Shown here one piece after another: positions 8,034-62,669 of a stretch of DNA of 64,000 nucleotides. The stretch comes from Octopus bimaculoides. Lineage: Eukaryota. The notes beneath the pieces were generated by a model. It searched no databases. It was given only the letters and a program-made list of their open reading frames with translations, and was not told the origin of the DNA. The stretch's first letter is position 1, and each line of letters begins with the position of its first letter. The stretch lies in the NCBI RefSeq assembly GCF_001194135.2, contig NC_068999.1, forward strand, positions 51,981,315 to 52,045,314, in the 5' to 3' direction. The position numbers were made by a program, and so were the translations under genes.

Positions 8034-10724
8034 CACAGTGCCACAAAATTGATTTATTTGTCCCCAACACAGATAAACTTCAGTCTAAAGAGGTGGAGCC
8101 ATAGAAATTGCCTGTGACTTACATATTGACTTTTTTCATTTGGCCTTCCAGCCAAATTAGCATATTGACATTGTGATTTTCTCATATATCATGGTTTTGT
8201 TGTGTTGTTTGAAATGAAATAGAAAAAGTTTCTCTCTCAAACTATCCATATTGGTAATTCCTTGCAACTACTGAAAATCTGGCTTGTGAATGAGGAAGTA
8301 CGTTTTTTTTTTTTGTTTGTTTGTTTTTTGTTTTTTTTTTGTAATGCTGGTCAGGTAGCAAGAGAATGGTTTGTCAGTGTTAACTTATTTTGCAGTATCT
8401 GATATGGACATGATTCATTACAATATCTACACATCTGTCCACTTGTTCTTAACTCCTTTTCATTCCTCTTATATCATGTCACCCCCTCCCCCATTTCTTT
8501 GAATCGTTGGTGGAACCATGATGTTCTGATAATCTGATGAACTAGCTTTCTTTATTTGCATTGGTTTGTGAATATACAATTGTATAATGCATAACATGCA
8601 TATTAATGCAAAACATCTAAACATCATTTCTTTTACACTGAAATTATTACTACATGAAGAGGGTTGTGAAACAGCTGTAATCATAAGGATGTCAAATGGT
8701 TAAATATATTCATCTCTCATACCACTATATATATATAGTGGTACATAAAAGCAACAACACTGTCCCAGTTGCAGGAGCATTACTGCATTCTATAATTTTG
8801 TTTTTTTAATTTTCTCATGGCCTACACATATCTTACATATAAAACAATATCTTTGAGTATTCCTCCAACCACATTTCCATCATTGGCAATGCTGATATAA
8901 ACAAAAACTACAGATATCTTGGCACAAGTTATTATCTAATATTTAGAAAATATCCAAAGCACTATTTTTAGTGCCAGGATTAGCAAATTTCTAGAAAACA
9001 AAATAAAAAACTTTTCTAAAATCTTTGAACTTCTACAAAACTAACATTTATGTTTTTATTTCCTTTTTTTTTTTTTTTTTTTTGTAAATATTAGTCATAC
9101 TATATATTGAAATGTTTTATGTGGTGACAATTATTGAAATACCCATAAGGAAAGTATATTTCATTAATAAGTGTGTTAATATTTGAATTTATTGACATTA
9201 ATTAGTATCTGAGTTTGAACTAACTGAATTTATTTCATTCCATTTCATTGTTGAGTTAATGTAGTCAAAATCATTACTTGGTTGAATCTCATCGAGATGT
9301 TTCATGCTTTTATGGCAATACATAAAAAACGCATTGCACTTCTAAGAATCGATCAATCGGTTTGTGTCAAGATAGAATAGTCAACTTGTCTGTTGCATTT
9401 AATATAAAGGTTAAAATATAATTTTCCAATTGACAAACTGTTACTACCTTTTCAAAATATCAAATGCACCTCTAAAACTCTGTATGTTTTCCCATAAATG
9501 TTACTCACCTGTCCCTTTTATCTTTGCCTTTGCTGAATTACCAATATTATTCTCATTATTTTGTGAAAATTGACAATATATTTTTATGGGTGGTAAAATG
9601 GGCAGAGTCAGTGGAGCATTAGATGAAATACCTTATGGCATTTATTCCAGCATTCAGAGTTCAAATCCTGCCTATGTCAATTTGCCTTTCATCCTTTCAG
9701 GGTTGAAAAAATTAACAGTTTAGGGCAGGCAGATTCATTACAGTGTCTGACTGAATCACTTGTGCTTTCAGCTCCAACTTTTTACATTCTGAGTTCAAAT
9801 CCCACCAAGGTCGATTTTACTTTCCATCCTGGAAGAATGGGAAAAATAAGTACCACTCTAGGACTAATAGACTGGTAGAATTGATAGAGCATCAGACAGT
9901 AAGGCTTGCAGTATTTATTCTGATTCATTGCATTTTAAGTTCGAAACCTGCCATGGGTTGGTCCTTGGATACCTTTAGCAGAGTCTACTGTTGTAAACAT
10001 TTGGGCCAGTTCTCTAGTTTGAGGATACCTTCCTCTTCCTCTCTCTTTTCCTAGTCTGAGAGGTTCTAAAAAGAGTCATGGGCACTGCCTTTCCTCCCTA
10101 TCTAAATGATAAAAAATAAAATCTTGTTCACAAAATTCTGGGTATATATCGAATTATCTTAATCAACCATGAATTTAATATTTGCTTGATCAAATTATAA
10201 ATTCCTCTCTGTCTCTCATATGTATATAGTATACACACATTTCCTGGATTACACTACTTTCTGTCTGTCATCCATCCCTCTATCCTCTTTTCTTGTTGTC
10301 CTAAATATACAGATAAACCTCAGAATACTGATCCCCCCCATCACTATTACTCACCACCACCACCCACTCCTATCGTACAATCTTCTTCTCACTATCATTC
10401 ATTCTTGCCTCACACCTTGTAAAAGAAACTAGTAACAAGGTCATGAGATCTGTTTAGTCTTGTCAAGGACCATAGCACCTCTCTGGTGCCTGTGCTACAA
10501 AAAAAAAATGCATCCAGTACACTCTATAAAGTGATTAGTGTTAAGGGCATTGAGCCCTGGAAACCAAGCTAAAAATGAAATGTGAGCAATATGCAATCCT
10601 TCGCACTTGTCTAGATGTGCGCAGGGCCCCTGAATAAGTGCTGACCCTGAATGTGGTTGACACTTTCCATGTTTGGAAAGCAAATATAAAATGATGCTGG
10701 TGTGTGTGTGTGTGTGTGTGTATT

Positions 10725-28440: not shown

Positions 28441-29314
28441 GGTAATTTTATAAATTATACAATTTCTGATGATCTGAAGATATATTCTAATTATGAAGTA
28501 ATAATCCATATAACATATTTTCATAAATGAAACACATGAAAGAATGCATTAAATAAATGTAAAATCTCCATTCTTGTTTCATGTTCAGAACAAGATCTCA
28601 GATCGCCAAACTAGTACTACACCAAAATATGAATTATATAACTTGAGGAAAAAAAATTTCCCAAAATCTCTTAACACTGAAATTTGCCTAGTTTTTGTGG
28701 TGGATGAAATTTGTCATGCTGCCTCTCATCACACATATTGTGTCTAAACCAACCTAGGATCCCACATTAATTACTGTACTCAGTCTTTTCTACTCAGAAC
28801 ATCGACCCACTGGAATTCCCTTCTCCCTGTTCATATCTTTCCCACAGATGTTGACTCACAAAGATTCAGGTGAAACACTAATAGCAACAATCTCACCAGT
28901 CGAGGGACACCTCGTCAAGGCCCAGGAATTAAAAACAAATATTCATGTAAGAGTACAAAGGAATGAAAATAGAACTTAACACATTTTATGGGAGCTAAAA
29001 GTGTTTAAGTTGACTCTATCCTGCTTTACTCAGAATTTTGTTTAGTTCATCAGATGTCCAGCGACTAACGGAGAAGAGATTAAAATAACTTCTAAGTGAG
29101 AATATTTGGGGCTCTCCTATTGGTTAGTTCATGTCACATGGCTGAAAGAACAACACCATATATTGTTTATACATGTATGTATATTTTGATTTACTAACGT
29201 TGTTGTATTTATGTATGCAATTTAAATGAAAATTGATGAATTCCTAATAAGTTTACATGTGATATTAAACAATTTCCTGGACTTGGTATTTTCCTTGACC
29301 TAGCTTTTTTCCAG

Positions 29315-43244: not shown

Positions 43245-43456
43245 CTACACATACATGGTGGTTGTCTACTCCTTAAACAGAGTTTGACCACCTCCTGCAC
43301 CTACACCTTAGCCCTTTCATGGCGTCTGATGTGGCTTTTTAAACCAGACAGTGTTTTGAAAAAACACCCACACAGATTGCACCTCTGATTTGCACTACCA
43401 ATACCTGCAAGTAAGTTCTGCTCATTGTGGATCCTAACATGTCTTTTAAGACCCCC
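43245..43456 (-). mobile_element. 3' end of a LINE (RTE-type) encoding C2H2 zinc fingers
   Basis: The translation is GGLKRHVRIH...CNLCGCFFKTLSGLKSHIRRH-ERAKV-stop (43301-43303), followed by a short 3' tail. It is 5'-truncated at an (ATAC)n tract and has no TGEKP linker. Confidence 0.55.
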
Positions 43457-43761
43457 ATACATACATACATACATACATACATACATACATACATACATAC
43501 ATACATACATACATACATACATACATACACTACATACATGCATACACACACACACACACATTCCTGAAGGCAAATTGGCAGAATCATTAGAACAAAATAC
43601 TAAGCAGTGTTTAATTATGGCTCCTTACATTTTGAGTTCAAATCCTGCCAAGACTAACTTTACATTTTATTCTTCCAGGGTTGATAAGATAAAGTACACA
43701 TCAAGTATTGGGGTCAATTTATATCCCTGTAATGCATCCTAGATGTGAATGGGGATATAAG

Positions 43762-49025: not shown

Positions 49026-49210
49026 ATTGCTTCTCGGCCTTTTGGCTGAGATCAAAGTGAAGTATCTGTTCTTAGCTTAATAGCTGATACAGTCCCTACT
49101 TGGGACCATCAGTGTTAAACTGGTTTTTAGAACAAGGCAATGATTTGGGGGTTTGCTCTGCCTTTGCTACGGGTTGGCTTAGTATTGCAGTACTTCCAGG
49201 ATTTAGCCCA
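49026..49210 (+). pseudogene. U2: U2 snRNA full-length pseudogene
   Basis: The sequence ATTGCTTCTCGGCCTTTTGGCTGAGATCAAAGTG...GTATTGCAGTACTTCCAGGATTTAGCCCA matches U2 end to end. The branch-point recognition GUAGUA is GAAGTA (49059-49064), stem IIa lacks about 3 nt, and the Sm site reads GTTTTTA. Confidence 0.9.
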
Positions 49211-49510
49211 TCTCCCACCCGGAGACACAAATTAATAGGCACAGGAGTGGCTGGGTGGTAAGAAGCTTGCTTCCCAACCACATGGTTCCCAGTTCAGTCC
49301 CACTGCATGGCACCTTGGGCAAGTGTCTTCTACTATAACCTTGGGCAAACCAAGCCTTGTGAGTGAATTTGGTAGACGGAAACTGAAAGAAGCCCATTGT
49401 ATATATATGTATATATAGTTGGAATTTACAAAAAAAAAAAAAAAAGACGAAGACAGGTGTGTAAACAACAAACAGGTGTATTAGTTTAATGCTCGGGAAG
49501 GTGAGAAAGT

Positions 49511-49542: not shown

Positions 49543-49794
49543 AAGATGGCCGGACAGAGGTGGTCAGACAGGAGAGCTTGAGAACTGCCATCGCTTGAGA
49601 ACCGACGCTGGTGTGTTCATATCCCCGTAACATTAGCGGTTCGGCAAAATAAATCGATAAAATAAGTACTAGGCTTACAAAGAATAAGTTATGGGGTCGA
49701 TTTTTTCGACTAAAACTCTTCAAGCATAGCTGCAGTCAAATGACTGAAACAAGTAAAAGAATGTATGTGTGCTTAAGGCGTAGGTAATTAATAG

Positions 49795-50146: not shown

Positions 50147-50312
50147 TTATGAATACCTTGATGCGTGAATAAACTGTCGAATTTTAGCATATTTTAAATA
50201 AATAAATGACGAAATAACAATTTGCTATGTTTATACACAGCGTGTTAGACGTGCATTTTTGATAGATTTCTGAAATACTAGTAAGAATATTATTTTGATA
50301 GTGCCTTCTATA

Positions 50313-50502
50313 TATAAAAGTTAAGCAAACCTTCAGAAAAATTTTGAAAATCTTGTATTTTATTCAGAAACGGTGGTTAATGTTGACCGTATATTAGTGT
50401 GTTTTGGTATCAAATACGGATGCATCCGGTTTAGCTGCCACCCGTTGTTATTGGGTGCTAACCGGATTCAAAAGAACGTGTGGTTGTAACTCTACAAGAA
50501 AA
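50313..50502 (+). promoter_or_regulatory. Candidate distal promoter and non-coding first exon (secreted serpin isoform)
   Basis: TATAAAAG lies at 50313-50320. A locally CpG-rich stretch follows, ending at donor AAAA|GTGAGT (GT 50503-50504). There is no transcript evidence. Confidence 0.4.
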
Positions 50503-51276
50503 GTGAGTTTTGTTTATTTATTTTTTATGTTAGTAAGGAATACTTAAATGCGAGAAAAAAATAATACTTTGGTTACTTTGCTGTTCATTTTATATTTAAA
50601 ACTACTTGTATGACAGGTTTAAGAAATCAACAGGAAGACACCTCCGTTGTGAACCTGTCATTTGAGCAATAAAGACAGGGCGTAGTAACAGGTGAATGAT
50701 TTGCTAAGGTGAAGCACTAGATTTGTATCTATCTGTGGATTATTTATCTCAATTACGAACTCTCAGTACAGTGATCAAATAAAATTTTCCAACTCATCAC
50801 TGGGATTTGGCTTAAACCAGTTTTAGACGCAAAGTTTCAAAATAATTTGTTTTCCATTTCTTTTTACCAAGGATATTATTGTGTGTGTGTGTGGCTGCGT
50901 AGCAACAAGTTCACATCTCAACCACATGGTTCCAGGTTAAGTCCCGCAGTGGCACTTTAGCAAGTTGCTTCTACTATAGCCTTGGGTCAACCAAGGCCTT
51001 GTGAGAAGATTAGGTAGATGGAAACCAAAAGAAGTTGCATTGCGTGTATATATATATAATAAATAATAATATATATATATATATAGCGTCATCATCGTTT
51101 AATGTCCGTTTTCTTTGCTGACATAGGTTGGACAGTTTGATAGGTCTGGAAAGCCAGCGGCTGCACCAGACTCCAATCTAATCTAGCAAAATTTCTACAG
51201 CTGGATGCCCTTCCTAAAGCCAACCACTCCAAGTGCTTGAAATGCAGTGTATATGTATATATATATACATACATAT

Positions 51277-51308
<32 letters not shown>

Positions 51309-53426
51309 TTAAAGGGTAAAGGACAAAGACACCCTTCAGTCACAAATGACCAATGTAACTGCACCTAGAAGTTCCCCTCCAAAGTGCAAGTCTGGCCAAT
51401 GTTGTTTATGGAAGACCAGCAGTTGTTCATGCATACCAGTCTTCAATCTCCATGCCATCAACGTTGTCCAAAGGAAAGGCAAAGGCTGGTATGGCTTGGC
51501 TGCCAGTGACATCACAACTCATTTCTGTAGCTGAGTGAACTGGAGCTATGTGAAATAAAGCATCTTGCTCTCAAGAACACAATACACAGCCTGGTCCAAG
51601 AACTGAACTCACAATTTCATTATGTGTGTATGTGTGTGTGTGCTTGTGTATGTGTGTAAGTGTATGAACAAATATATATCATCATCATCATCATCATATA
51701 TTCTTTATTTCATAATTGTAAGAGTTAGACTGTTGATTCATTGGACCATTTATTCTTTCTACAGCTTGCCATTTAACTGTGACTTAATTTAGGTTATATG
51801 TATGTATGTATGTATGTATGCATGTATGTGTGTGTGTGTGTATGTATACACATATCAAGTTTATTTTCCTTCTGTTCAACAAACTAGTGCAAATAGAGAT
51901 GTGTGTCATATTCAGTGATATATAGCAATGCAGCTATAAAAATGAGTCATTTGATTTCACAGACATCGTACTTCTTTATTTCTAAGAGATATTAATTCAT
52001 GACAAAAGAATCAGTACCATTGACCTACTTTAAATTCTTTTTTGTTTTCTTTTGTTTTTTCTTCACTAACAATGGACCTCTCGGAAATGGCTAACGCTTT
52101 GTCTTGCCCACAGTAAACAATTGATATTTCAAAATATTCTGTATTCACTGTTGTTATAAATAGCTTGATGTCCAAAGATTAATCTTCCTTAATAATGAAC
52201 TTGAAGGTTGTGCATTAGTAAAGTATTAAACTTGAAACTTATCTCTTTGGAGATAGTAAAAAAAAGCTACTTCAGAATGGAACAAATTCAGAAAACATTA
52301 AAGATAGATAAGTTTTTCATTGAAAATAGTTGAAATCTCACTCAAATAACACCAGGTCATCACAAAAAAAGGAAGTATGTATATCAAACAATGTTGTAGA
52401 AATTCCATGTCTGAATAAAAAAATTTTTTTTAAAGGATGGTGTTTACATATGAAATGCCTTTCATTTGTAATTAATTAAGTGAGAAAAAGGCAGTCACAT
52501 GATTTTTGAACCAGCACCATGAATGGTGGTCCTATACATGTAAAAGTTTGTCTTTGAGAAAAATTTTCTGATCGTAACATACTTTCTGATAAACTGATGT
52601 ATTCTTGAGAGCAAGATGCAGTAAATAAAGACTTACAAAATAATTTAATCTCAATGTTTGTCATAGAACAAAACCTGCTAAATGCATCCTAAGGTTCCAC
52701 ATTTTTTTGCTTGTTTGTTTCTTTGGTCCCAATTTTAAGCCAATCGCTGTCTTTGTTACCAATTGACCTATGAATGTTTCCTCTTTACATGGGCTAATAT
52801 ACTGAAATTACTTTCACAAAGTAGCAAGTACCTAAACAGGTGTTGTTATTACAACTATGTAAGCTGGTATTTTGTCACTAATGTTCCTGAAAATGCCAGG
52901 TGTAGTCAATTGAAATAGACAAACAAACAAATAAATAGATGAATAAAAATGCAGACGTATGTTTTCTTCCATTTGAAATACTTTAGATGTTAAGTAGACA
53001 ACTACAAGACTATAAATAATTCTTACAATGGAATTTACCTCACAATGAATTAGTTTTAGTATTTAATTTCTTTGTGTCTTCATCGTCATCATCATCATCA
53101 TCATCACTATTGTCACAACCACAACAAGCAGCAGCAGCATAATCTCCTTTCTTTAAGTTGAAGCAGTTTTTCCATTGGTCATTTTTGTATCTTTCCACAT
53201 TGCTTTTAAAAGTCACTTTTAGTTAAGTCCTAACAGTATTTTCCTAAAACTTGGATATCAGTAACAAACAGCTATTTTGAAACAATCTTACTGTTGTTGG
53301 AGTCATTAATTTAAAAAAAAATAATTCCTTTATTTTCTTTTTTTTTTTTTATAATTAGCAATACCAAGACTAAATTACCATTCCTTTACATGGTGGTCAT
53401 TTTAAAAGTTTAACTGCTACCCAGAC

Positions 53427-53496
53427 ATGGCAAGAATAATCACAGGTTTTCTATTCTTGGCTGTCTTATTTTGCATGTCACAACAAACAGTTTCAG
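53427..53496 (+). CDS. Signal-peptide exon (MARIITGFLFLAVLFCMSQQTVS), probably the first coding exon of the secreted serpin isoform
   Basis: The start context is gacATGg, followed by Arg, a hydrophobic core and a T-V-S c-region. The exon ends at a phase-1 donor TCAG|GTAAAT (GT 53497-53498). Joining G to AC at 58378 gives D-T-I-V-Y-N-M-D, in frame with the serpin. An acceptor-like ttaactgctacccAG precedes position 53425. Confidence 0.75.
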
Positions 53497-55267
53497 GTAA
53501 ATATCTCTTCATTTTTTTTTNNNNNNNNNNNNNNNNNNNNNNNNNNNNNNNNNNNNNNNNNNNNNNNNNNNNNNNNNNNNNNNNNNNNNNNNNNNNNNNN
53601 NNNNNNNNNNNNNNNNNNNNNNNNNNNNNNNNNNNNNNNNNNNNNNNNNNNNNNNNNNNNNNNNNNNNNNNNNNNNNNNNNNCCCCACCTATTTCTCATT
53701 TCAGTGTGTGTCAGCTGGGTCTGCTAGGTTTATCATGACTGCCAGAAACTCCATATCTCTGCAGATGAGTATATTGCCTTTATATTCCTTAATTATTGAG
53801 TATCACTTCATATTAGACGTACATGTAATTGTGTGTCTATGTATGTGTATGTATGTTTTTTTTCTTTTCCTTTTACTTGTTTCAGTCATTTGACTGCGGC
53901 CATGCTGGAGCACCGCCTTTAGTCGAGCAAATTAACCCCAGGACTTATTCTTTGTAAGCCTAGTACTTATTCTATTGGTCTCTTTGGCCAAACTGCTAAG
54001 TTACGGGGACGTAAACACACCAGCATTGGTTGTCAAGCGATGGTGGGGAGACATTAGTGTTTAATCCTGCCTATATTTAGATTGAATGAATCTGATTATT
54101 AAGCTTTCACTTTTATTATACTATGGAAGATTGTAGGGATTAAAATATATGATTTCAAGGTTTGATCGCTGTTTAGTTACATATTTAGGAGTTGGTTATT
54201 GATTTATCTATTGCATTTATTTACATGGGTTGGACGATTTGACTGAGGACTGGTGAAACCAGATGGCTACACCAGGCTCTAATCTGATTTGGCAGAGTTT
54301 CTACAGCTGGATGCCCTTCCTAATGCCAACCACTCCGAGAGTGTAGTGGGTGCTTTTACGTTCCACCAGCACGAAGGCCAGTCAGGCGGTACTGGCAACG
54401 GCCACACTCAAAATGATGTATTTTACGTGCCATCTGCCCAGGAGCCAGTTCGGCGGCACTGGCAACGATCTCGCTCAAACGTCTTTACATGTGCCATCTG
54501 GCACAAGTGCCAGGAAGGCGATGCTGGGCACAGGTGCCATTGACGGTTTCGCTTTCGCTTGCCCCAGCTTGTTGTGTCTAGGGAAGGTAATTATCCCTAT
54601 AAAGATTTGTTTCATCAATTCACATCAAGGATCTTGCAAACCGAATACCAAAAGTAAACAGCTTATGTATGTTATTGATTGGAGAAGGAAGTTCATTACA
54701 TCTCTGAGCAGCACTCAATAAATCATGAAACAGACAAGCAGGAGACTTACCACCTCTTTTTCTTGTGCATCAAAAGTATAGAAAGAATAAGAATGCATTT
54801 ATCTTCTTATTCTTATTTAAAACATAGTGAAGCTTTATAATATTCAAATTTATTTCATTTTTGTTTTACTGTTTTGTTCATAAGTAGATATTGTCTAATT
54901 AATGATAAGCCATCAAAAGTACAAATATGTAAATTAGGTTATTCACCATGATGCTATCCTAATTTATGACTGCTTGGGATGGACTAGGTAAATACCAGTA
55001 ATATATTATTGATTCAAGGCGGCATACTGGCAGAATCATGAGCACACCAGGCAAAATGGTTTGTGGCATTTCATCTGTTTTGGGTTCAAATTCTGCCTTT
55101 CAGGGGTCGATAAATTAAGTACCAGTTGGACAACTAGGGTTGATGTAATTGTCTAGCACCCTCCCCCAAAATTCTTAGCCTTGTGCCAAAATTTGAAACT
55201 AATATATTTTCATTGATTCAATTGGCTATGGCTACATTGAGTTCAACACTCAGCCATGGAAAATATT

Positions 55268-55680
55268 CTTTTCTACTCTTGGCACAAGGCCTGAAATTTT
55301 TAAGGTGCGGGGGCCAGTCAATTAGGTTGATCCAGTATGCAACTGGTACTTAATTTATCAACCTCGAAAGATTGAAAGGCAAAGTTGACCTCAGCGGAAT
55401 TTGAACTCAAAACATAAAGACAGACGAAATACCGCTAAGCATTTCACTTGACGTGCTAACGTTTCTTATTTCTTTATTGCCCACAAGGGGCTAAACATAG
55501 AGGGGACAGCCAAGGACAAAGGGATTAAGTTGATTACATCGACCCCAGTGCGTAACTGGTACTTAATTTATCAACCTCGAAAGGATGAAAGGCAAAGTCG
55601 ACCTCAAGAACGTAACGGCAGATGAAATACCTCTAAGCATTTCACCTGACGTGCTAACGTTTCTGGCAGCTTGCTGCCTT
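55268..55680 (-). mobile_element. SINE (family A here) with internal duplication and a perfect 16-bp TSD
   Basis: AGCCATGGAAAATATT flanks it at 55252-55267 and 55681-55696. The block actggtacttaatttatcaacctcgaaag...aaaggcaaagt occurs twice. Confidence 0.85.
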
Positions 55681-57062
55681 AGCCATGGAAAATATTGATT
55701 AATCACAGGAATCCAATTCTAAACTTATATATTTCTCTTTCACTCTTGTCTCTCTCCTTTTCTTTTTCCTTCTTTCCTCTTTACCTATCCCATACAGACC
55801 ATTCTCACTGAATCCATTTTTCTCTCGTTTTGTCTTCTATCAATTTCTTTCATTTTCATTCTGTCCGAGATGATTTTTTAAAAATCTAATCCTCTCAAAA
55901 TCTCATATTTTCTTACATTTCTCTTACTTCACCCACCATTATTTGCCACATATTTTATTCTACCAAATAATTTCTGCCATTTTCTCCCACTTTTTCTCTT
56001 TTCAACTCTCTCTTCTTGTCTGTATTCTCTATTTCCTTCTCTAACTGTTGCTTCCTCTCTCTCTCTCCTGATCTCCCCTCCTTCTCCCTCTAGCCGTTAC
56101 ATCCGCTTTCCTTTATACAATGAACAAGTTAGCTTTCCTTCTTTCTGCTATACTCTTATCTGCCTATATATCAACTCCTCTTCCATTCCCCACTGTCTGT
56201 CCCTTTTATCTATACATTCACTCTATATTGACCTCATTGATTTCTCTGAATCATAGAATAAATTGTGTCTGAATACAACTGAGTTTTAGAAGAAAATAAT
56301 AAAATGTCATAAAAAAAAAAAACTGAAACTTAAACCAATACACAAAAATAGGTGACTGGTGATTACTAGTTATACTTATATAAACAGAAACTACAACTAG
56401 ATCCACAATAGTACATAGAACGTTGAGCAAATACTAATAGCCCACGCACTGTCAACTAAAAACACGTGAAAAGAATCATTAGAGCGATTTTCTCCTGGAT
56501 TTCAGAACCATAAATCAAGCTCCTGTTACATTATTTAAATATTTACCTGTGGTAAGCAGAACTTTCATAATTATTTCTCCACGCACTATCTTACCACACT
56601 CACACACATTTACTTTTTATAGCAATATAAGTATTACTATAACAACAAAAGGTCAGTTGGGTCATACATGGGGCGTGTCATAGATTCTTGCCAGCGGTGT
56701 ATGCGTATTTTATTTTCCCGTAGCGCGATTTGAACCCAACACTGCAAGTTAGCGAAATTTTCGTTAGTTATAGGTCTTGCTCTACTCAGTGCTTGACTTA
56801 TGGACAGGTCCTGTAAGCAGTGTCTTTACAAGGCTCTGTTACCCATGGAAAAAAGATAGTTCACATTCCTATCCGGAGACCTTTTGATTTGATTTAGTTT
56901 ACATAAATGTTTGTAGCACATTGGAAGCTGTATTGAAATTCCCAGCAAAAGAGGTTTGACGACCTTTTTTTCTTTCAGTATTATGTAGACTTTCAGTTTG
57001 TCCAGAAACTTTAGTTCTGTTCATTAATCGTTTACTCTATTCATTGAGTTATTGTTCCTTAT

Positions 57063-57198
57063 TATAAAAGTGCTTCGGTCGAGTATTAGTTAAACTTTTC
57101 CTTGCTAGTTGAGAAAAATATCTTTATTCATTATTATTATTTCTGGCTTAGCCTTGTGTGTGTGTGAAGATATAAGGGAAGTTAAAGCTCACGAAAAT
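57063..57198 (+). promoter_or_regulatory. Candidate proximal promoter and ATG-free first exon (cytosolic serpin isoform)
   Basis: TATAAAAG lies at 57063-57070 and an Inr-like TTAGTT at 57086-57091. There is no ATG before donor AAAT|GTAAGC (GT 57199-57200). The upstream region (56420-57100) retains CpGs and has a kB-like GGGAATTTCA on the minus strand at 56934-56943. Confidence 0.45.
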
Positions 57199-57437
57199 GT
57201 AAGCTAAGATAAAAAAAAAGTTGGGTAGCCGAAAACGGCACATTATTCGCGGAGATCGCTAATTAGTATACTATACACTTACTAGAGCCAAGTGATGAAT
57301 CTTCTTCGTGGTAGCTAGATTTGCGAGAAATTGCAGCCAAATCTGGCTCAAATCGTACCATATCATCTTAAAATAGACAAGGCCACATGTAGTCATCTGT
57401 GTGTGTGTGTGTGTGCATATATTGTGACACTCTATCG

Positions 57438-57468
<31 letters not shown>

Positions 57469-58377
57469 GTGACACTCCGTCGGTTACGATGACGAGAGTT
57501 CCAGTTGATCCGATCAACGGAACAGCCTGCTTGTGAAATTAACTTGCAAGTGGCTGAGCACTCTACAGACAGTGTACCCTTAACGTAGACCACCTGGGGC
57601 GAAATAGAAAATTCTTTGCTGTGTTTTTCCATGGCAAAATTCCGCCTTTTCTACTTTATGCTGCAGTTAGCTTTTTGTATGCTACCGAAATTTAAGGAAT
57701 GCTTCTGCCATTTTCTTTCTATTAATAAGGGACGTAACTCGCCATACTAATTACTTCACCAGCTTCATTGCGACATCAGTCAAACTTTTCTTCCTAAGTC
57801 TTTCCAAAATAGACGATATTCTGTAGTTTTGTTATGCATTACTTGAAAAACAAATCCCGACAAAAGTTCACCACGAAGGAGATTAGATTTTTTTTTCACT
57901 TCGTCTTTTTAGATAAAATAAGACAAGTTATCCAAAAGAATATTCGGTAATTTTTTATGAAGTAAAATAATGGAAATTATTTATTATTAACGTATTCATT
58001 TTCGAGTTTTCCCATTTGCTAAAAAAAACTTGGCTGGCATCAAAATCCGAATATGAGCCAATGAGAGAAACCCTGTAAAATTTCATTTAATTTGGGGTCC
58101 TTATGTAGCATTGGTATATTTTGGGTGACAATGGTGAAGGCTTCTTTGTTTCTGGGGTAGTATGGAACCCCAATGGAAGAAAGAAATGGTTATATCATTA
58201 AATCTTATAAATTTTTAATTATTTTTAAAACTATTTAAAACACTTAATGTGTTACCTTTCAAAATATGTTCATGTAAAAGTTAAATTGAAAGTTTGAAGA
58301 GATTTCAGATATTGCTTTCATAGATGTTTGCCAGAATTTATTTTGTATGTTTTCTCTTCATATTCTATTTTCTCCAG

Positions 58378-59439
58378 ACACTATCGTATACAATATGGAC
58401 TCAGCAAAGAAACAAGACATCAGTAATCTTGCTGCTTCAATTGATTATTTTACAAACAGTCTTTATCAAGCTGTGGCTACAGGAACCAACGAAAATGTCT
58501 TCATGTCACCATTCAGTGTTGCTACTGTTTTATCGATGGTTTATTTGGGAGCAAGACAAAACTCTGCCAAACAGTTTGAAAATGTTTTGAAGATAACTTC
58601 TAATCCAGATTCTGTAGCTTTGGCTTTTAAAGAATATTTTTCCCTTTTGAAAAACTCAGATAAACTTGTCACATTCAATTCAGTGAATCGTTTGTGTGCC
58701 AATGAAAAATTCCCTATTTCAGAAGACTNNNNNNNNNNNNNNNNNNNNNNNNNNNNNNNGAAGTTTGACACCTCAGTCGGTTCTAGTTCTTATTAATGCT
58801 GTGTACTTTAAAGGAATGTGGGCTGAAAAATTCCCAGAACAAGCAACATCATCTAGAAAGTTTTATTTAAGTTCTGGGAAGACTATATCTCATGATTTTA
58901 TGTATATATCTGAAGATTTTAATACAAAAATAAGTGACAACTATAAAGTTGTTGAGTTACCTTATATAGGAAAAGCTTTTAGTATGTTTGTAATTCTTCC
59001 CAATGAAATCAATGGTCTTGCTGCTTTAGAGAAGGAGATTAATGCTAAATTTCTCAAAGACATTGTAGATAGAAAAGGATTTGAAATGATGTATCTAGAA
59101 TTAAATATGCCAAAATATCGTTTAGAGAGTAGTTTTAAGTTGGGTGATGTTTTGAAAAAGCTTGGACTCCCTGATATTTTTGATCCTCAAAAAGCTGACT
59201 TATCTGGAATGACCGGTGGTGAAAAGAATATTTATGCCAGTGAAATGTTTCATAAAGCATTTGTTGATGTTAATGAAGAAGGAACAGAAGCTGCTGCTGC
59301 TACTGGAATGGTTATGATGGCATTGTCAGCACAAATCGGTATGGAATTTGATGTCAATCACCCATTCACATTTTTAATTGTTGATAACCGAACTAAAATG
59401 ATCCATTTCATTGGTAAAGTAACAATTCCTACAACGTAA
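58378..59439 (+). CDS. Serpin (serine protease inhibitor, leukocyte-elastase-inhibitor/clade-B-like), main coding exon; interrupted by an under-sized assembly gap at 58729-58759
   Basis: Serpin motifs are present: NVFMSPFSV, LVLINAVYFKGMW, VVELPY, MFVILP, LPDIFDPQKADLSGM, HKAFVDVNEEGTEAAAATG (hinge) and FDVNHPFTFLI (signature). The stop TAA is at 59437-59439. The acceptor is ttctattttctccAG (58376-58377). An internal ATG at 58395 has strong context (aatATGg). Confidence 0.95.
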
Positions 59440-59982
59440 GATGATATTGCACTGTCAATGATTTTCCTCTTATGGGATACTACATTGTATTATGTGGAGA
59501 ATGTAACTGAGCAAATTTATTTAGAATCTTTTTCANNNNNNNNNNGATGGCATTGTCAGCACAAATCGGTATGGAATTTGATGTCAATCACCCATTCACA
59601 TTTTTAATTGTTGATAACCGAACTAAAATGATCCATTTCATTGGTAAAGTAACAATTCCTACAACGTAAGATGATATTGCACTGTCAATGATTTTCCTCT
59701 TATGGGATACTACATTGTATTATGTGGAGAATGTAACTGAGCAAATTTATTTAGAATCTTTTTCAGTAAAATTACTTAGGTCATTACAGTTGTAATCGTG
59801 CAGAACCATGGTCATATCTATCCAATGAAATATTATAAGACTACTTTAATCTAAATCAATATTATTAACTTGTATTTGCCATACATTGACAGAAAAATAT
59901 TACACTGCTTAAAGTATCTTTTCTTAGCAAGTTAATGATTTTAACAATATACTTACTGTTGCCTGTAAACATTTACTGGTTA

Positions 59983-60034
59983 AATAAAGTGAAATCAATG
60001 CTTGTATGCTTTTATTTCTGTTTATATTAATAAA
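59983..60034 (+). terminator. Candidate polyadenylation signals of the serpin
   Basis: AATAAA occurs at 59983-59988 and 60029-60034, in AT-rich sequence downstream of the stop. Confidence 0.45.
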
Positions 60035-60897: not shown

Positions 60898-61603
60898 TAC
60901 CATGTATGATATATAATGCTTTCATCAATGGAAACAATGTTGGGTTATTTGTGTGGCTTCAGAATGGGAATACTTCAAAGAGGATTAAATGCTGGATTAA
61001 TATGTGTTGTAGTTTTCTTTTTATAGCACAAGTCCTGATACTGTTTGATATAATATACATCTTAACAACTTAAATAAATTAATAGAAAATATGGTTTGAG
61101 AATATATTTTCAGCACAAAAATACTTTTTTCTGAGAGGAAAATTTAAATGGCACAAATATTGTTGTACAGAACAGAAGAAAGGCTGTTATTTCTACATAA
61201 AGTAATATGGAAATGGATAATGGATGCCACATAAGTTAAAACAATATAAAGCAGACGCAAATCCCTGGTATCAGTCGATCTGATGACAAAAGAATGTATC
61301 ACCCAATATATTCAGTTTAATAACACTTTGACAATGCCACATTACTTTAGAAATTGAGAGCACTTTTACATCATCAGATATTTAAGGAGAGAGTTAAGAG
61401 AATTTAATATAAATCTGAAGTGGCTTGAGGGCTGATGTATTTAAATTCATATAGGAAACAAACGTAATGTTGGTGCCAAGTAAATGACATTCTGCAGTGT
61501 ATGATATTTCAGTAACAATTGCTTCTTATATTATATGCTACATGAGGGATGAGGAGCAAGTTCTGAAGAGGGTGCTAGATTCTGAGGTAATCTAGCTGTC
61601 TTA

Positions 61604-62042
61604 CAACATAGTAATTAATATTAATTCTTCCTTTTTCAACATCTGTCATGAAAGCAACATTTTCAATATCTGAAAAGAAATATTTTGCAGCATTGTTCTT
61701 GTAGTCTTCTAAAATATGAAATTTTTCATTGGCACACAAACAATTAATCGAATTCAATGCAATAAGTTCATCTGAGTTTTTCAAAATGGAAAAATATTGT
61801 TTAAAAGCCAAAGCTATAGGATCTGGATTGAAAGTTATTTTCAAACTGTTTGGCAGAGTTTTGTCTTGCTCCAGAATGAACCATCAATAAAATAGTAGTA
61901 ACACTAAACGGTGACACGAAAACATTTTCAACGGTTCCTGTAGCCACGGCTTGATAAAGACTGTTTGTACAATAATCAACTGAAGCAGCAAGGTTACTGA
62001 TATCTTGAGCCTTTGCAGAGTCCATATTGTATTCGGTGGTGT
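61604..62042 (-). pseudogene. Inverted, truncated serpin pseudogene (N-terminal ~150 codons)
   Basis: It is about 88% identical to 58378 onward over the first ~205 nt (manual count). It keeps the homologous acceptor (ttcttcAG, 62044-62043) and an ATG 17 nt into the exon (62025). An 11-bp deletion at 61837-61845 shifts the frame, and homology stops after EKGRININ. Confidence 0.9.
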
Positions 62043-62669
62043 CTGAAGAATATGCAATATGAAGAGATGAAATGCAGAGGAATTTCCTAAAAAACAGTGT
62101 CTGTTTAATATCTCAAGAGATTGTAAAACACACTAATGTGATCTAAGAAATCTGTATGAAATTGATCTATAATGATTTATGAAAAAACCGAATTTTTATT
62201 GTTTCCTTACTGCATTCTAAATGTAATAAATAATGTTTGAATCTATTTTGAAAATAATCACTGATGGAATATATACCAGTCTTAGAAAATAAGTACTTTG
62301 GTTGCTTATTTCGAGTAAGATATTCAAGGTAGTGCCCTAGCAATTGTCTTCTCATACTACTAGCAAGAGCCTGCGTGTGTTTAGATCTGTTTCAGCGTAT
62401 AGTCATTATTACTCATTATTCTATTCATGTAATATTCCATTGTTCTCATTTCATCTATTATTTGATAATTGTTTGGAGATCTCTACTTTTAACATTCATA
62501 AATCCAACAATACTATGTACTCATCAGATTATTTTATTCTTGTTTTGTGTTTTGTCTAATTTTTTTTGAAGTAGAATTACTCACCATCCTTCATACTAAC
62601 TCAACATTTTGAAATATTTGTACAGAACTCATAATAAAAATATGCATGCATGTGTGTGTGCATGCACAT

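What the first reader, a model, noticed from the sequence alone, without database searches (positions are those of the whole stretch)
50313..59439. One serpin, two possible promoters: secreted versus cytosolic isoforms
Seen: a signal-peptide exon (53427-53496) joins the serpin acceptor in phase 1 with no frameshift. A separate ATG-free exon (about 57088-57198) lies inside that intron and would make ATG 58395 the start, giving a leaderless protein. Each candidate first exon has TATAAAAG upstream (50313, 57063) and a GTRAG donor. The acceptor and the Met 17 nt into the exon are conserved in the paralogous pseudogene. Established: Drosophila Spn42Da makes isoforms with and without a signal peptide through alternative 5' exons, and clade-B-like serpins are usually intracellular. 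Inference: this locus switches one inhibitor between compartments. The kB-like site at 56934-56943 hints that the cytosolic form is immune-inducible.
Basis: partly seen in the sequence, partly recalled or inferred. Interest (0 to 1): 0.72.

Follow-up and report, generated by a model that had tools for sequence, protein, structure and literature searches.

The report
Octopus serpin array sharing one leader exon

Summary
The window is Octopus bimaculoides chromosome CM046619.1. The leader exon 53427-53496 joins acceptor 58378 in phase 1, and Met 58395 lies 17 nt into the exon.

The interpretation needs revising.
- The leader exon is not private to this serpin. RefSeq and the 2015 annotation join this same exon to two other serpin bodies, 13 and 18.6 kb downstream and outside the window.
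- In O. sinensis one orthologous leader exon precedes seven bodies. RefSeq there joins it to the ortholog of this body (isoform X1) and also models a leaderless isoform (X4). So a secreted/leaderless pair already exists as gene models.
- The promoter claims fail. TATAAAAG occurs at chance frequency. The 50313 copy lies in an 88-nt indel absent from O. sinensis. The 57063 copy is TACAAAAG there, followed by a 435-nt insertion, and donor 57199 is GA.
- The kB-like site is a 9/10 match, one of six in the window.
- The gap at 58729-58759 breaks the frame as written. The ortholog and three paralogs have exactly 141 nt there, which would restore the frame.

No transcript data were reachable, so no splice junction was tested directly.

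The parts
53350..53426 (+). Conserved 77-nt block directly upstream of the leader ATG. It contains TATAATTAGC at 53350, CCATTCC (initiator-like) at 53378-53384, an upstream ATG at 53390 and CAG at 53422-53424. It is either the core promoter plus 5' UTR of the leader exon, or the 3' end of an intron that uses acceptor 53424.
   Evidence: 75/77 identical to O. sinensis against 0.86 in the flanks. 66/77 identical to the paralogous O. vulgaris locus L003 against 0.59-0.71 in the flanks.
53427..53496 (+). Coding part of the leader exon: a 23-residue signal peptide plus one base (phase 1), with donor GTAAAT at 53497.
   Evidence: Translation. The hydrophobic core at residues 4-17 has a Kyte-Doolittle 11-mer mean up to 2.8, and T-V-S occupies -3 to -1. 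It is used verbatim by P0001 and P0002. It is the only such exon in the window and L001.
53497..58377 (+). Intron between the leader exon and body A. It contains the 162-N gap at 53521-53682 and many interspersed repeats.
   Evidence: Colinear with O. sinensis L002 10071-22109. The gap flanks match L002 10093 and 10234.
58324..58377 (+). Conserved 3' splice region: a pyrimidine tract ending in CAG.
   Evidence: Conserved in all 10 bodies and in the pseudogene fragment, including bodies B and sin6 whose sequence further upstream is unrelated. Identity to the ortholog is 0.93.
58378..59439 (+). Serpin body A, a single exon. The phase-1 codons DTIVYN come first, then Met 58395. The 31-N gap at 58729-58759 hides about 47 codons. 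The hinge and reactive-centre loop read EGTEAAAATGMVMMAL|SAQI, with P1 Leu inferred by counting from the hinge. The stop is at 59437-59439.
   Evidence: Pfam Serpin E = 1.2e-86. Both visible parts are open. dN/dS against ortholog sin1 is 0.15, with dS 0.134. The paralogs have 141 nt in place of the gap.
59440..59990 (+). 3' UTR of body A with AATAAA at 59983. It includes the artefactual duplicate at 59546-59765.
   Evidence: With the duplicate removed, the sequence is colinear with the downstream regions of the O. sinensis bodies (88-89%).
57030..57145 (+). Conserved non-coding block around TATAAAAG (57063). The 75 nt after that motif are nearly invariant. Its function is unresolved: a promoter and start of a non-coding exon, an acceptor-flanked exon, or a regulatory element.
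   Evidence: 57071-57145 is 74/75 identical to O. sinensis against 0.77-0.88 in the flanks. Copies lie upstream of body C (L001 25927-26038) and of sin7 (L002 45460-45544). No stable fold and no Rfam match.
57088..57198 (+). It is a doubtful exon.
   Evidence: In the ortholog the TATA reads TACAAAAG and is followed by a 435-nt insertion with inverted ends. About 120 nt are inserted at 57153, and the donor GTAAG reads GAAAG. The donor is also absent from the paralogous copies.
50313..50502 (+). It is unsupported.
   Evidence: 50287-50376, which includes the TATA, is absent from O. sinensis. 50377-50502 is 0.79 identical, against 0.90-0.91 for the following 230 nt. The donor AAAG|GTGAGT is conserved. 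The paralogous locus L003 has no counterpart.
61600..62097 (-). Truncated, frameshifted N-terminal serpin fragment (pseudogene) that keeps the acceptor and the Met. It forms a roughly 395-nt inverted repeat with the N-terminal part of body A.
   Evidence: tblastn hits in two frames, with no C-terminal half. Sequence. Inverted repeat 58334-58728 against 61703-62086, 85-87% complementary.
56934..56943 (-). kB-like decamer GGGAATTTCA. It is a chance-level match.
   Evidence: 9/10 to GGGRNYYYCC, and six such matches lie in the window. It is conserved in O. sinensis no better than its flanks.

Best explanation
The region is the 5' end of a complex serpin locus in Octopus bimaculoides.

Proposed mechanism:
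- One short leader exon (53427-53496) encodes a cleavable signal peptide and ends in phase 1.
- It is spliced to the conserved acceptor of one of several downstream single-exon serpin bodies.
- Body A (58378-59439) is the first body and the only one in the window. Bodies B and C lie 13 and 18.6 kb downstream of the leader.
- Each body has its own stop codon and 3' end, shown for A (AATAAA at 59983) and inferred for the others. The bodies differ mainly in the reactive-centre loop. Inferred P1 residues are Leu in A, Tyr in B and Cys in C.
- One leader would therefore deliver inhibitors of different specificity to the secretory pathway.
- Each body also keeps what looks like the ancestral start codon 17 nt inside the exon, in a strong context (A at -3, G at +4). 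A transcript lacking the leader exon would give the same inhibitor without a signal peptide, presumably cytosolic.

Shown here: the exon anatomy, reading frames, orthology, purifying selection on body A, and the existence of exactly matching gene models.

Inferred: that the leader-to-A junction is used in O. bimaculoides, that several bodies really share the leader, and that leaderless transcripts are made.

Unresolved: where transcription starts for either form. The best-conserved candidate for the secreted form is the 77-nt block abutting the leader ATG, not the TATA at 50313. For the leaderless form, no donor is conserved in the block at 57030-57145.
For: - Identity of the locus: the window equals CM046619.1 at 100%.
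- P0001 is exactly leader + body B. P0002 is exactly leader + body C. P0133 and P0003 are exactly the O. sinensis leader + sin1 and leader + sin6. All use the homologous GTAAAT donor and YAG acceptors.
- Only one leader exon precedes 3 bodies in O. bimaculoides and 7 in O. sinensis.
- The last 55 nt of intron plus AG are conserved upstream of every body, and the 5 pre-Met codons are open in all of them.
- sin1 is the positional and sequence ortholog of A: 97% and 95% amino-acid identity, with the same reactive-centre loop except one residue.
- dN/dS of A against sin1 is 0.15.
- Leaderless models exist with bodies identical to the leader-bearing ones: P0131/P0133 and P0121/P0001.
- The leader exon + 5-7 codons + Met layout recurs in a 56%-identical paralog (L005) and in Argonauta (L004).
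- A polyadenylated leaderless mRNA of a 46%-identical cephalopod homolog carries an in-frame stop 4 codons upstream of its ATG.
- Identity across the reactive-centre loop (P8-P8') is 0.54 against 0.92 elsewhere.
Against: - No RNA reads, ESTs or proteomics for this locus could be reached (literature).
- Gene models are not experiments. RefSeq isoform X2 of O. sinensis (P0122) is a chimera of the first half of sin1 and the second half of sin2, which shows that model building in this near-identical array can go wrong.
- To my knowledge RefSeq also uses cross-species protein alignments as evidence, so the two species may not be independent.
- No RefSeq model joining the leader to A in O. bimaculoides appeared among the search hits. 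The frame-breaking gap could explain that, or it could mean A is not used.
- The gap hides 47 codons of body A.
- Leaderless models may simply be what gene finders emit when the distant leader exon is not linked.
Confidence: 0.6

Rival explanations
1. This is a self-contained two-promoter gene for one serpin. A TATA promoter at 50313 drives a non-coding exon, then the signal-peptide exon, then the body. A second, immune-inducible TATA promoter at 57063 drives non-coding exon 57088-57198, then the body, giving the cytosolic form.
For: All motifs are in place. 57063 is the only TATAAAAG in the window followed by an ATG-free stretch and a GTRAG donor. The 75 nt after it are 99% conserved in O. 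sinensis, and the TATA is intact in two paralogous copies. Donor AAAG|GTGAGT at 50503 is a perfect consensus and is conserved.
Against: The TATA at 50313 lies in an 88-nt indel absent from O. sinensis, and its exon is less conserved than its intron. In the true ortholog the 57063 TATA reads TACAAAAG, is separated from the conserved block by a 435-nt insertion, and the donor reads GAAAG. No copy conserves a donor. The T-to-C change preserves a pyrimidine tract followed by AAAAG|, so the motif could equally be an acceptor. The leader exon is shared with other bodies. The kB site is a chance-level match.
Confidence: 0.12
2. Secreted only. Every functional body is expressed solely through the shared leader exon. 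The Met after the junction is just a conserved residue left from an ancestral start, and the leaderless isoforms are annotation defaults or come from unspliced RNA.
For: Every body keeps a strong conserved acceptor, which a self-standing single-exon gene would not need. B and sin6 have no conserved sequence beyond 55 nt upstream of the acceptor, so they have no obvious promoter of their own. The one Logan contig that encodes a leaderless octopod protein (L006) simply continues into intron sequence, so it is genomic or unspliced. Model building here is error-prone.
Against: The Met and its strong context (ACAATATGG) are invariant in all bodies and in the distant paralogs. RefSeq carries leaderless isoforms alongside leader-bearing ones for three separate genes. 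Most bodies share about 250 nt of conserved upstream sequence with a TTATAAATTTT motif. A homolog in another cephalopod is expressed as a leaderless polyadenylated mRNA.
Confidence: 0.22
3. Body A is a dead or unexpressed copy. In O. bimaculoides the leader exon serves only bodies B and C, and A sits inertly in their first intron.
For: No O. bimaculoides RefSeq protein for A was among the hits. Only the 2015 model P0004 exists, and it splices the gap out. The reading frame is broken as assembled. A degraded paralog lies next to it.
Against: The frame break coincides exactly with an assembly gap whose expected content is 141 nt. The 336 visible codons are open, with dN/dS 0.15 against the ortholog, which is intact and modelled as expressed. 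The acceptor, Met, hinge and stop are all intact.
Confidence: 0.06

Closest known systems
Drosophila melanogaster Spn42Da (Serpin 4)
   Same: One locus yields serpins with and without an N-terminal signal peptide through an alternative 5' exon. It also yields several reactive-centre loops through alternative 3' exons, giving intracellular and secreted inhibitors of different specificity (PMC4006314).
   Different: In Spn42Da two invariant core exons are kept and only a small reactive-centre-loop exon is swapped. Here the only shared coding part is the 23-residue leader. What is swapped is a complete single-exon serpin with its own stop and, for body A at least, its own polyadenylation signal. 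No ER-retention motif is visible at the C-terminus (…GKVTIPTT). The octopus isoforms are gene models, not characterised proteins.
Serpin genes with reactive-centre-loop exon cassettes (Manduca sexta serpin-1, Anopheles SRPN10, nematode and urochordate serpins)
   Same: Inhibitory specificity is diversified from one transcription unit by choosing among alternative exons that carry the reactive-centre loop. The nematode and urochordate cases are mentioned in PMC4006314. The Manduca and Anopheles examples are from my own knowledge.
   Different: Those cassettes encode only the C-terminal 40-60 residues. In the octopus array each unit is a full serpin that could also stand alone, and the units are interspersed with inverted pseudogene fragments.
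Vertebrate clade B (ovalbumin-type) serpins such as SERPINB1, leukocyte elastase inhibitor
   Same: These are the best vertebrate matches, at 32-34% identity, and the source of the RefSeq names. The body has no N- or C-terminal extension, and the leaderless form starts about as far before helix A as clade B proteins do.
   Different: Clade B proteins have no cleavable N-terminal signal peptide and have multi-exon genes (my own knowledge). Here a dedicated signal-peptide exon exists and the body is one exon. Phylogenetic membership in clade B was not tested.
Drosophila lola and mod(mdg4) type loci: common 5' exons joined to an array of alternative 3' terminal exons
   Same: The same overall gene logic: one promoter and 5' exon set, with many alternative terminal exons that each end in their own stop and poly(A) site. 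This comparison is from my own knowledge.
   Different: In those loci the common part encodes a large functional domain. Here it encodes only a targeting signal, and the variable parts are entire proteins.

Membership tests
Serpin superfamily (Pfam PF00079) | A full-length match to the serpin domain profile above the curated cut-off | tested here: met
   E = 1.2e-86, 291.7 bits against a cut-off of 27, in two stretches on either side of the gap.
Inhibitory serpins | Hinge consensus: P17 Glu, P15 Gly, P14 Thr/Ser and small residues at P12-P9, followed by an exposed reactive-centre loop | tested here: met
   E-E-G-T-E-A-A-A-A-T, then GMVMMAL|SAQI. Protease inhibition itself cannot be tested here.
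Inhibitory serpins | An uninterrupted open reading frame through the whole fold | tested here: inconclusive
   111 + 226 open codons, but about 47 codons lie in the gap at 58729-58759. The ortholog and three paralogs have 141 nt there, which would keep the frame.
Secretory protein with a cleavable signal peptide | A positively charged n-region, a hydrophobic h-region of 7-15 residues, and small uncharged residues at -3 and -1 | tested here: met
   MAR / IITGFLFLAVLFCM / SQQTVS, with T at -3 and S at -1. This is by inspection only. No SignalP run and no secretion assay were possible.
Spn42Da-type dual-compartment serpin gene | The same mature serpin produced with and without a signal peptide through alternative 5' exons | tested here: inconclusive
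   Exactly matching gene-model pairs exist for the ortholog (P0133/P0131) and for neighbour B (P0001/P0121). No transcript evidence was reachable, and the 5' exon of the leaderless form is unknown.
Spn42Da-type dual-compartment serpin gene | Invariant core exons combined with small alternative reactive-centre-loop exons | tested here: not met
   Each body is a single exon from acceptor to stop, and whole bodies are the alternatives.
Clade B (ov-)serpins | No cleavable N-terminal signal peptide | tested here: not met
   A dedicated signal-peptide exon joins in frame. Only the leaderless form would resemble clade B.
Clade B (ov-)serpins | Phylogenetic grouping with vertebrate SERPINB genes | not tested
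   Only similarity ranking is available: 32-34% identity to mammalian SERPINB3, B4 and B11.
TATA-box core promoter at 50313 | The motif is retained at the orthologous position, with a transcription start about 30 nt downstream | tested here: not met
   The motif lies in an 88-nt segment absent from O. sinensis. The transcription start cannot be tested here.
TATA-box core promoter at 57063 | The motif and its spacing to the downstream exon are retained in the ortholog | tested here: not met
   It reads TACAAAAG and is followed by a 435-nt insertion in O. sinensis. It is intact in two paralogous copies.
Rel/NF-kB binding site at 56934-56943 | A match to GGGRNYYYCC that is rarer than chance | tested here: not met
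   GGGAATTTCA matches 9/10. Six such matches lie in the window, and the only full match to the consensus lies elsewhere, at 29108.

The most novel reading that the evidence does not exclude
A single signal-peptide exon acts as a common leader for a tandem array of complete single-exon serpin genes: at least 3 in O. bimaculoides and up to 7 in O. sinensis. Each has a different reactive-centre loop, and the choice is made by alternative splicing to alternative terminal exons. Each unit can also be expressed without the leader. The interspersed inverted pseudogene fragments can pair over about 395 nt with the preceding body in the long pre-mRNA, and might influence which acceptor is chosen or attract RNA editing.
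Probability: 0.5. Interest if true: 0.6.

Novelty: new variant of a known kind. Interest (0 to 1): 0.45.

Why it matters
If the shared-leader reading is right, octopods diversify secreted protease inhibitors by a route not described for serpins. Whole inhibitor genes are swapped behind one targeting exon. In insects, nematodes and urochordates, by contrast, a small reactive-centre-loop exon is swapped behind a constant core.

It would also be a clean natural case in which one short exon decides between export and cytosolic retention for a whole family of proteins. That bears on cephalopod immunity, haemolymph and saliva biology.

There is a practical lesson too. Annotation in this array is unreliable: one RefSeq isoform is a chimera, the O. 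vulgaris annotation includes serpin models of 1126 and 1736 residues against about 384-413 for a single serpin, and an assembly gap sits inside body A. Counts of octopus serpin genes and isoforms should be treated with care.

Tried and rejected
- Transcript evidence. A second protein search with the leader plus the N-terminal 117 residues gave only two NCBI fragments and no transcriptome contigs.
- The Logan contig for the nearest leaderless octopod protein (L006) turned out to be colinear with intron sequence, so it says nothing about splicing.
- Four literature searches found no paper on this locus or on octopus serpin isoforms.
- I looked for the proposed upstream exon in the paralogous O. 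vulgaris locus, and for all conserved blocks in the distant paralog and in Argonauta. Nothing was detectable at nucleotide level.
- I tested whether the conserved 57040-57160 block is a structured RNA or microRNA precursor. It folds no better than shuffled sequence (z = +1.5 on both strands) and has no Rfam match.
- I considered it as a coding cassette exon between the leader and the body. It is rejected because a stop appears after 7 codons in phase 1 (read).
- I considered the in-frame upstream ATG at 58347 (MFSLHILFSP...) as an alternative start. It is rejected as a conserved feature because it exists only in A and sin3.
- Paralog conservation of the TATA block, about 87% between A and C, is not exceptional. 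A neighbouring 314-nt segment is 81% and a 55-nt one is 94.5%.

Full report
**What the window is.** The serpin product matches Octopus bimaculoides proteins best. The locus fetched for RefSeq protein P0001 (L001, GCA_001194135.2, chromosome CM046619.1) is 100% identical to window 43427-64000, gaps included, with L001 coordinate = window - 43426. The DNA is about 31% G+C, rich in interspersed repeats, and carries 17 runs of N.

**Gaps, tested first.**
- The run at 58729-58759 (31 N) lies inside the serpin exon.
- Upstream of it the frame set by ATG 58395 is open for 111 codons. Downstream, a different frame is open for 226 codons to the stop at 59437-59439. As written, the two sides are out of frame.
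- The O. sinensis ortholog (sin1) and three paralogs (sin4, B, C) all have exactly 141 nt between the same flanking sequences. That gives 1 + 141 + 2 nt = 48 codons, which would restore one frame of 384 codons from the Met.
- The run at 53521-53682 is intronic and starts 25 nt after the leader exon's donor. Its flanks are colinear with ungapped O. sinensis DNA.
- A third artefact follows the 10-N run at 59536-59545. Positions 59546-59765 repeat 59316-59535 exactly. With the repeat removed, the sequence is colinear with every related locus.

**The observation.**
- The 70-nt exon 53427-53496 encodes MARIITGFLFLAVLFCMSQQTVS plus one base.
- G + AC at 58378 gives Asp. The reading then continues as DTIVYN-M(58395)DSAKK with no stop.
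- The peptide has the n/h/c layout of a signal peptide, with T and S at -3 and -1.
- The minus-strand fragment at 62097-61600 keeps the AG, the 17 nt and the ATG.

The regulatory motifs are not more than chance.
- TATAAAAG occurs four times on the + strand in 60 kb, with about 3.8 expected from composition.
- GTRAG occurs 1.27 times per kb.
- The kB-like decamer is a 9/10 match, one of six such matches in the window.

**What the leader exon is joined to.** This is where the interpretation changes.
- RefSeq isoform X1 of O. bimaculoides (P0001, XP_052830823) is exactly the window's leader exon plus a different serpin body, B, at L001 23137-24308. That is a 13,066-nt intron that skips body A and the pseudogene.
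- The 2015 model P0002 is exactly the same leader plus a third body, C, at L001 28648-29819.
- Protein and nucleotide searches find only one leader exon in the window and L001.
- In O. sinensis (L002, no gaps) one orthologous leader exon at 10001-10070 is followed by seven + strand bodies between 22 and 52 kb. Five are intact or presumed intact and two are broken. Inverted N-terminal fragments lie between them.
- RefSeq there joins the leader exactly to sin1 (X1, P0133) and to sin6 (X3, P0003).
- sin1 is the first body after the leader. It is 97% and 95% identical to the two visible parts of body A and has the same reactive-centre loop but for one residue, so it is A's ortholog. sin6 is B's ortholog.

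**The leaderless form.**
- O. sinensis isoform X4 (P0131) is sin1 from the Met onward. O. bimaculoides isoform X2 (P0121) is body B from the Met. The 2015 models P0004 and P0124 are leaderless A and C.
- The same pairing is annotated for a 56%-identical paralog (P0142 and P0014).
- The layout of leader exon, then 5-7 codons, then Met recurs in that paralog and in Argonauta hians.
- A 46%-identical serpin from another cephalopod is present in many RNA-derived contigs as a polyadenylated mRNA. It has an in-frame stop four codons upstream of its ATG and no leader.
- My inference is that the Met is the ancestral start and that the leader exon was added in the octopod lineage.
- The secreted/cytosolic idea is therefore reasonable and already present in public gene models. 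It has not been demonstrated.

**Cautions on the models.**
- I could reach no RNA evidence for this locus.
- The one Logan contig for a leaderless octopod protein continues into intron sequence.
- RefSeq isoform X2 of O. sinensis (P0122) matches sin1 up to at least residue 194 and sin2 from residue 195 on, so it is a chimera across two near-identical bodies.
- The O. vulgaris annotation includes serpin models of 1126 and 1736 residues, against about 384-413 for a single serpin.
- RefSeq models can also inherit structure from proteins of related species. This is my own knowledge, not tested here.

**The two proposed promoters.** Background non-coding identity between the two species is 0.77-0.91.

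For the 50313 exon:
- Positions 50287-50376, including the TATA, are absent from O. sinensis.
- The rest of the proposed exon is 0.79 identical, while the 230 nt of intron after it is 0.90-0.91.
- The GTGAGT donor is conserved, but so is everything around it.
- The paralogous O. vulgaris locus has no counterpart.

For the 57063 exon in the ortholog:
- The TATA reads TACAAAAG.
- A 435-nt element with inverted ends is inserted directly after it.
- About 120 nt are inserted at 57153.
- The donor GTAAG reads GAAAG.

However, the 75 nt just after the motif (57071-57145) are 74/75 identical. That is well above background and unlikely by chance (my estimate is about 7e-5 per window). The block, with an intact TATTATAAAAG, recurs upstream of body C and of sin7. 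It has no stable fold and no Rfam match, and it is closed in the coding phase. It is a real conserved element of unknown role. The T-to-C change keeps a pyrimidine tract ending in AAAAG, so an acceptor reading is as good as a TATA reading. No donor is conserved in any copy.

**A better candidate control region.** The 77 nt directly upstream of the leader ATG (53350-53426) are 75/77 identical in O. sinensis. They are 66/77 identical in the paralogous locus, whose flanks are only 0.59-0.71. The block holds TATAATTAGC. Thirty nucleotides further on lies CCATTCC, which fits an initiator consensus. The same block also ends in CAG|AC and contains an upstream ATG at 53390, which would argue for its being the 3' end of an intron. 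The data do not decide between the two readings.

**Function of the body.**
- Pfam Serpin matches at E = 1.2e-86.
- The hinge EEGTEAAAAT fits inhibitory serpins. Counting from it, P1 is Leu in A (MMAL|SAQI), Tyr in B, Cys in C and Phe in sin2.
- Among seven bodies, identity is 0.54 across P8-P8' and 0.92 elsewhere. This is the pattern expected if the array exists to vary target specificity.
- Body A is under purifying selection: dN/dS is 0.15 against sin1, with dS of 0.134, close to the non-coding divergence.
- All bodies, including B and sin6 whose further upstream sequence is unrelated, keep the same 55-nt pyrimidine-rich 3' splice region.

**Verdict.**
- The sequence observations are correct.
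- 'Secreted versus cytosolic' is plausible and already modelled.
- 'One serpin' and 'two TATA promoters, one immune-inducible' are not supported.
- The most interesting reading is a shared leader exon feeding an array of complete serpin exons. This is a variant of the Spn42Da and serpin-1 strategy in which whole inhibitors, rather than reactive-centre-loop exons, are exchanged.
- My estimates, given the dependence on gene models: about 0.75 that leader-to-A splicing occurs, 0.65 that several bodies share the leader, 0.5 that leaderless products are real, and 0.2 or less for either proposed promoter exon.

Noticed in passing
window 49026-49216 (+): A full-length U2 spliceosomal snRNA gene or pseudogene (Rfam RF00004, 130 bits against a gathering score of 46, model positions 1-192).
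   Followed up: no
window 58334-58728 and 61703-62086: A roughly 395-nt inverted repeat, 85-87% complementary, between the N-terminal part of body A and the minus-strand pseudogene fragment, with the arms about 3 kb apart. The same body-plus-inverted-fragment unit recurs four or five times in O. sinensis (L002 24135-24663, 28749-30074, 32609-33137, 35622-36150, 38349-38570). In a pre-mRNA running from the leader to body B the arms could pair. Any effect on splice choice or RNA editing is speculation.
   Followed up: partly
window 59536-59765: A 10-N gap followed by an exact 220-nt repeat of 59316-59535, which covers the last 122 nt of coding sequence plus the start of the 3' UTR. It is single-copy in all related loci, so it is an assembly artefact that creates a false extra serpin C-terminus.
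   Followed up: yes
L002 17784-18219 (O. sinensis), equivalent to window 57070/57071: A 435-nt insertion with roughly 50-nt terminal inverted repeats (GGGCGATCTTTCGTCTCTAGTAGACCTTTCCGTCGATTTCCGT...), resembling a miniature inverted-repeat transposable element. It is inserted exactly between the TATA-like motif and the conserved 75-nt block.
   Followed up: partly
L002 10001-26293 (O. sinensis RefSeq isoform X2, P0122): The model matches sin1 up to at least residue 194 and sin2 from residue 195 on. It is a chimera across two near-identical tandem bodies, probably an alignment or model-building artefact.
   Followed up: yes
L001 27893-27983 (O. bimaculoides, outside the window): RefSeq P0123 joins a different, non-hydrophobic 30-codon first exon (MPFERCLYKISLKGKKSNCVNFAEVLSPPL, donor GTTCGT) to the same acceptor of body C. 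The exon lies in a segment that has no counterpart upstream of body A.
   Followed up: partly
window 58172-58323: About 150 nt upstream of the conserved splice region are shared by most bodies but not by B or sin6. They include a TTATAAATTTT motif near 58205 and a tiny conserved upstream reading frame (ATGTTCATGTAA near 58264). This is a possible local promoter for unspliced leaderless transcripts.
   Followed up: partly
window 53856-54053, 49227-49417, 49589-49760, 54224-54500, 55016-55700: Interspersed repeat families with many copies (75-93% identity) in the O. sinensis and O. vulgaris loci. They fill much of the intron between the leader exon and body A.
   Followed up: no
window 43301-43573 (-): An open frame with a weak C2H2 zinc-finger match (E = 1.6e-4, below Pfam's cut-off), running into a microsatellite-derived CMYV repeat. 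It is possibly a gene fragment or transposon remnant.
   Followed up: no
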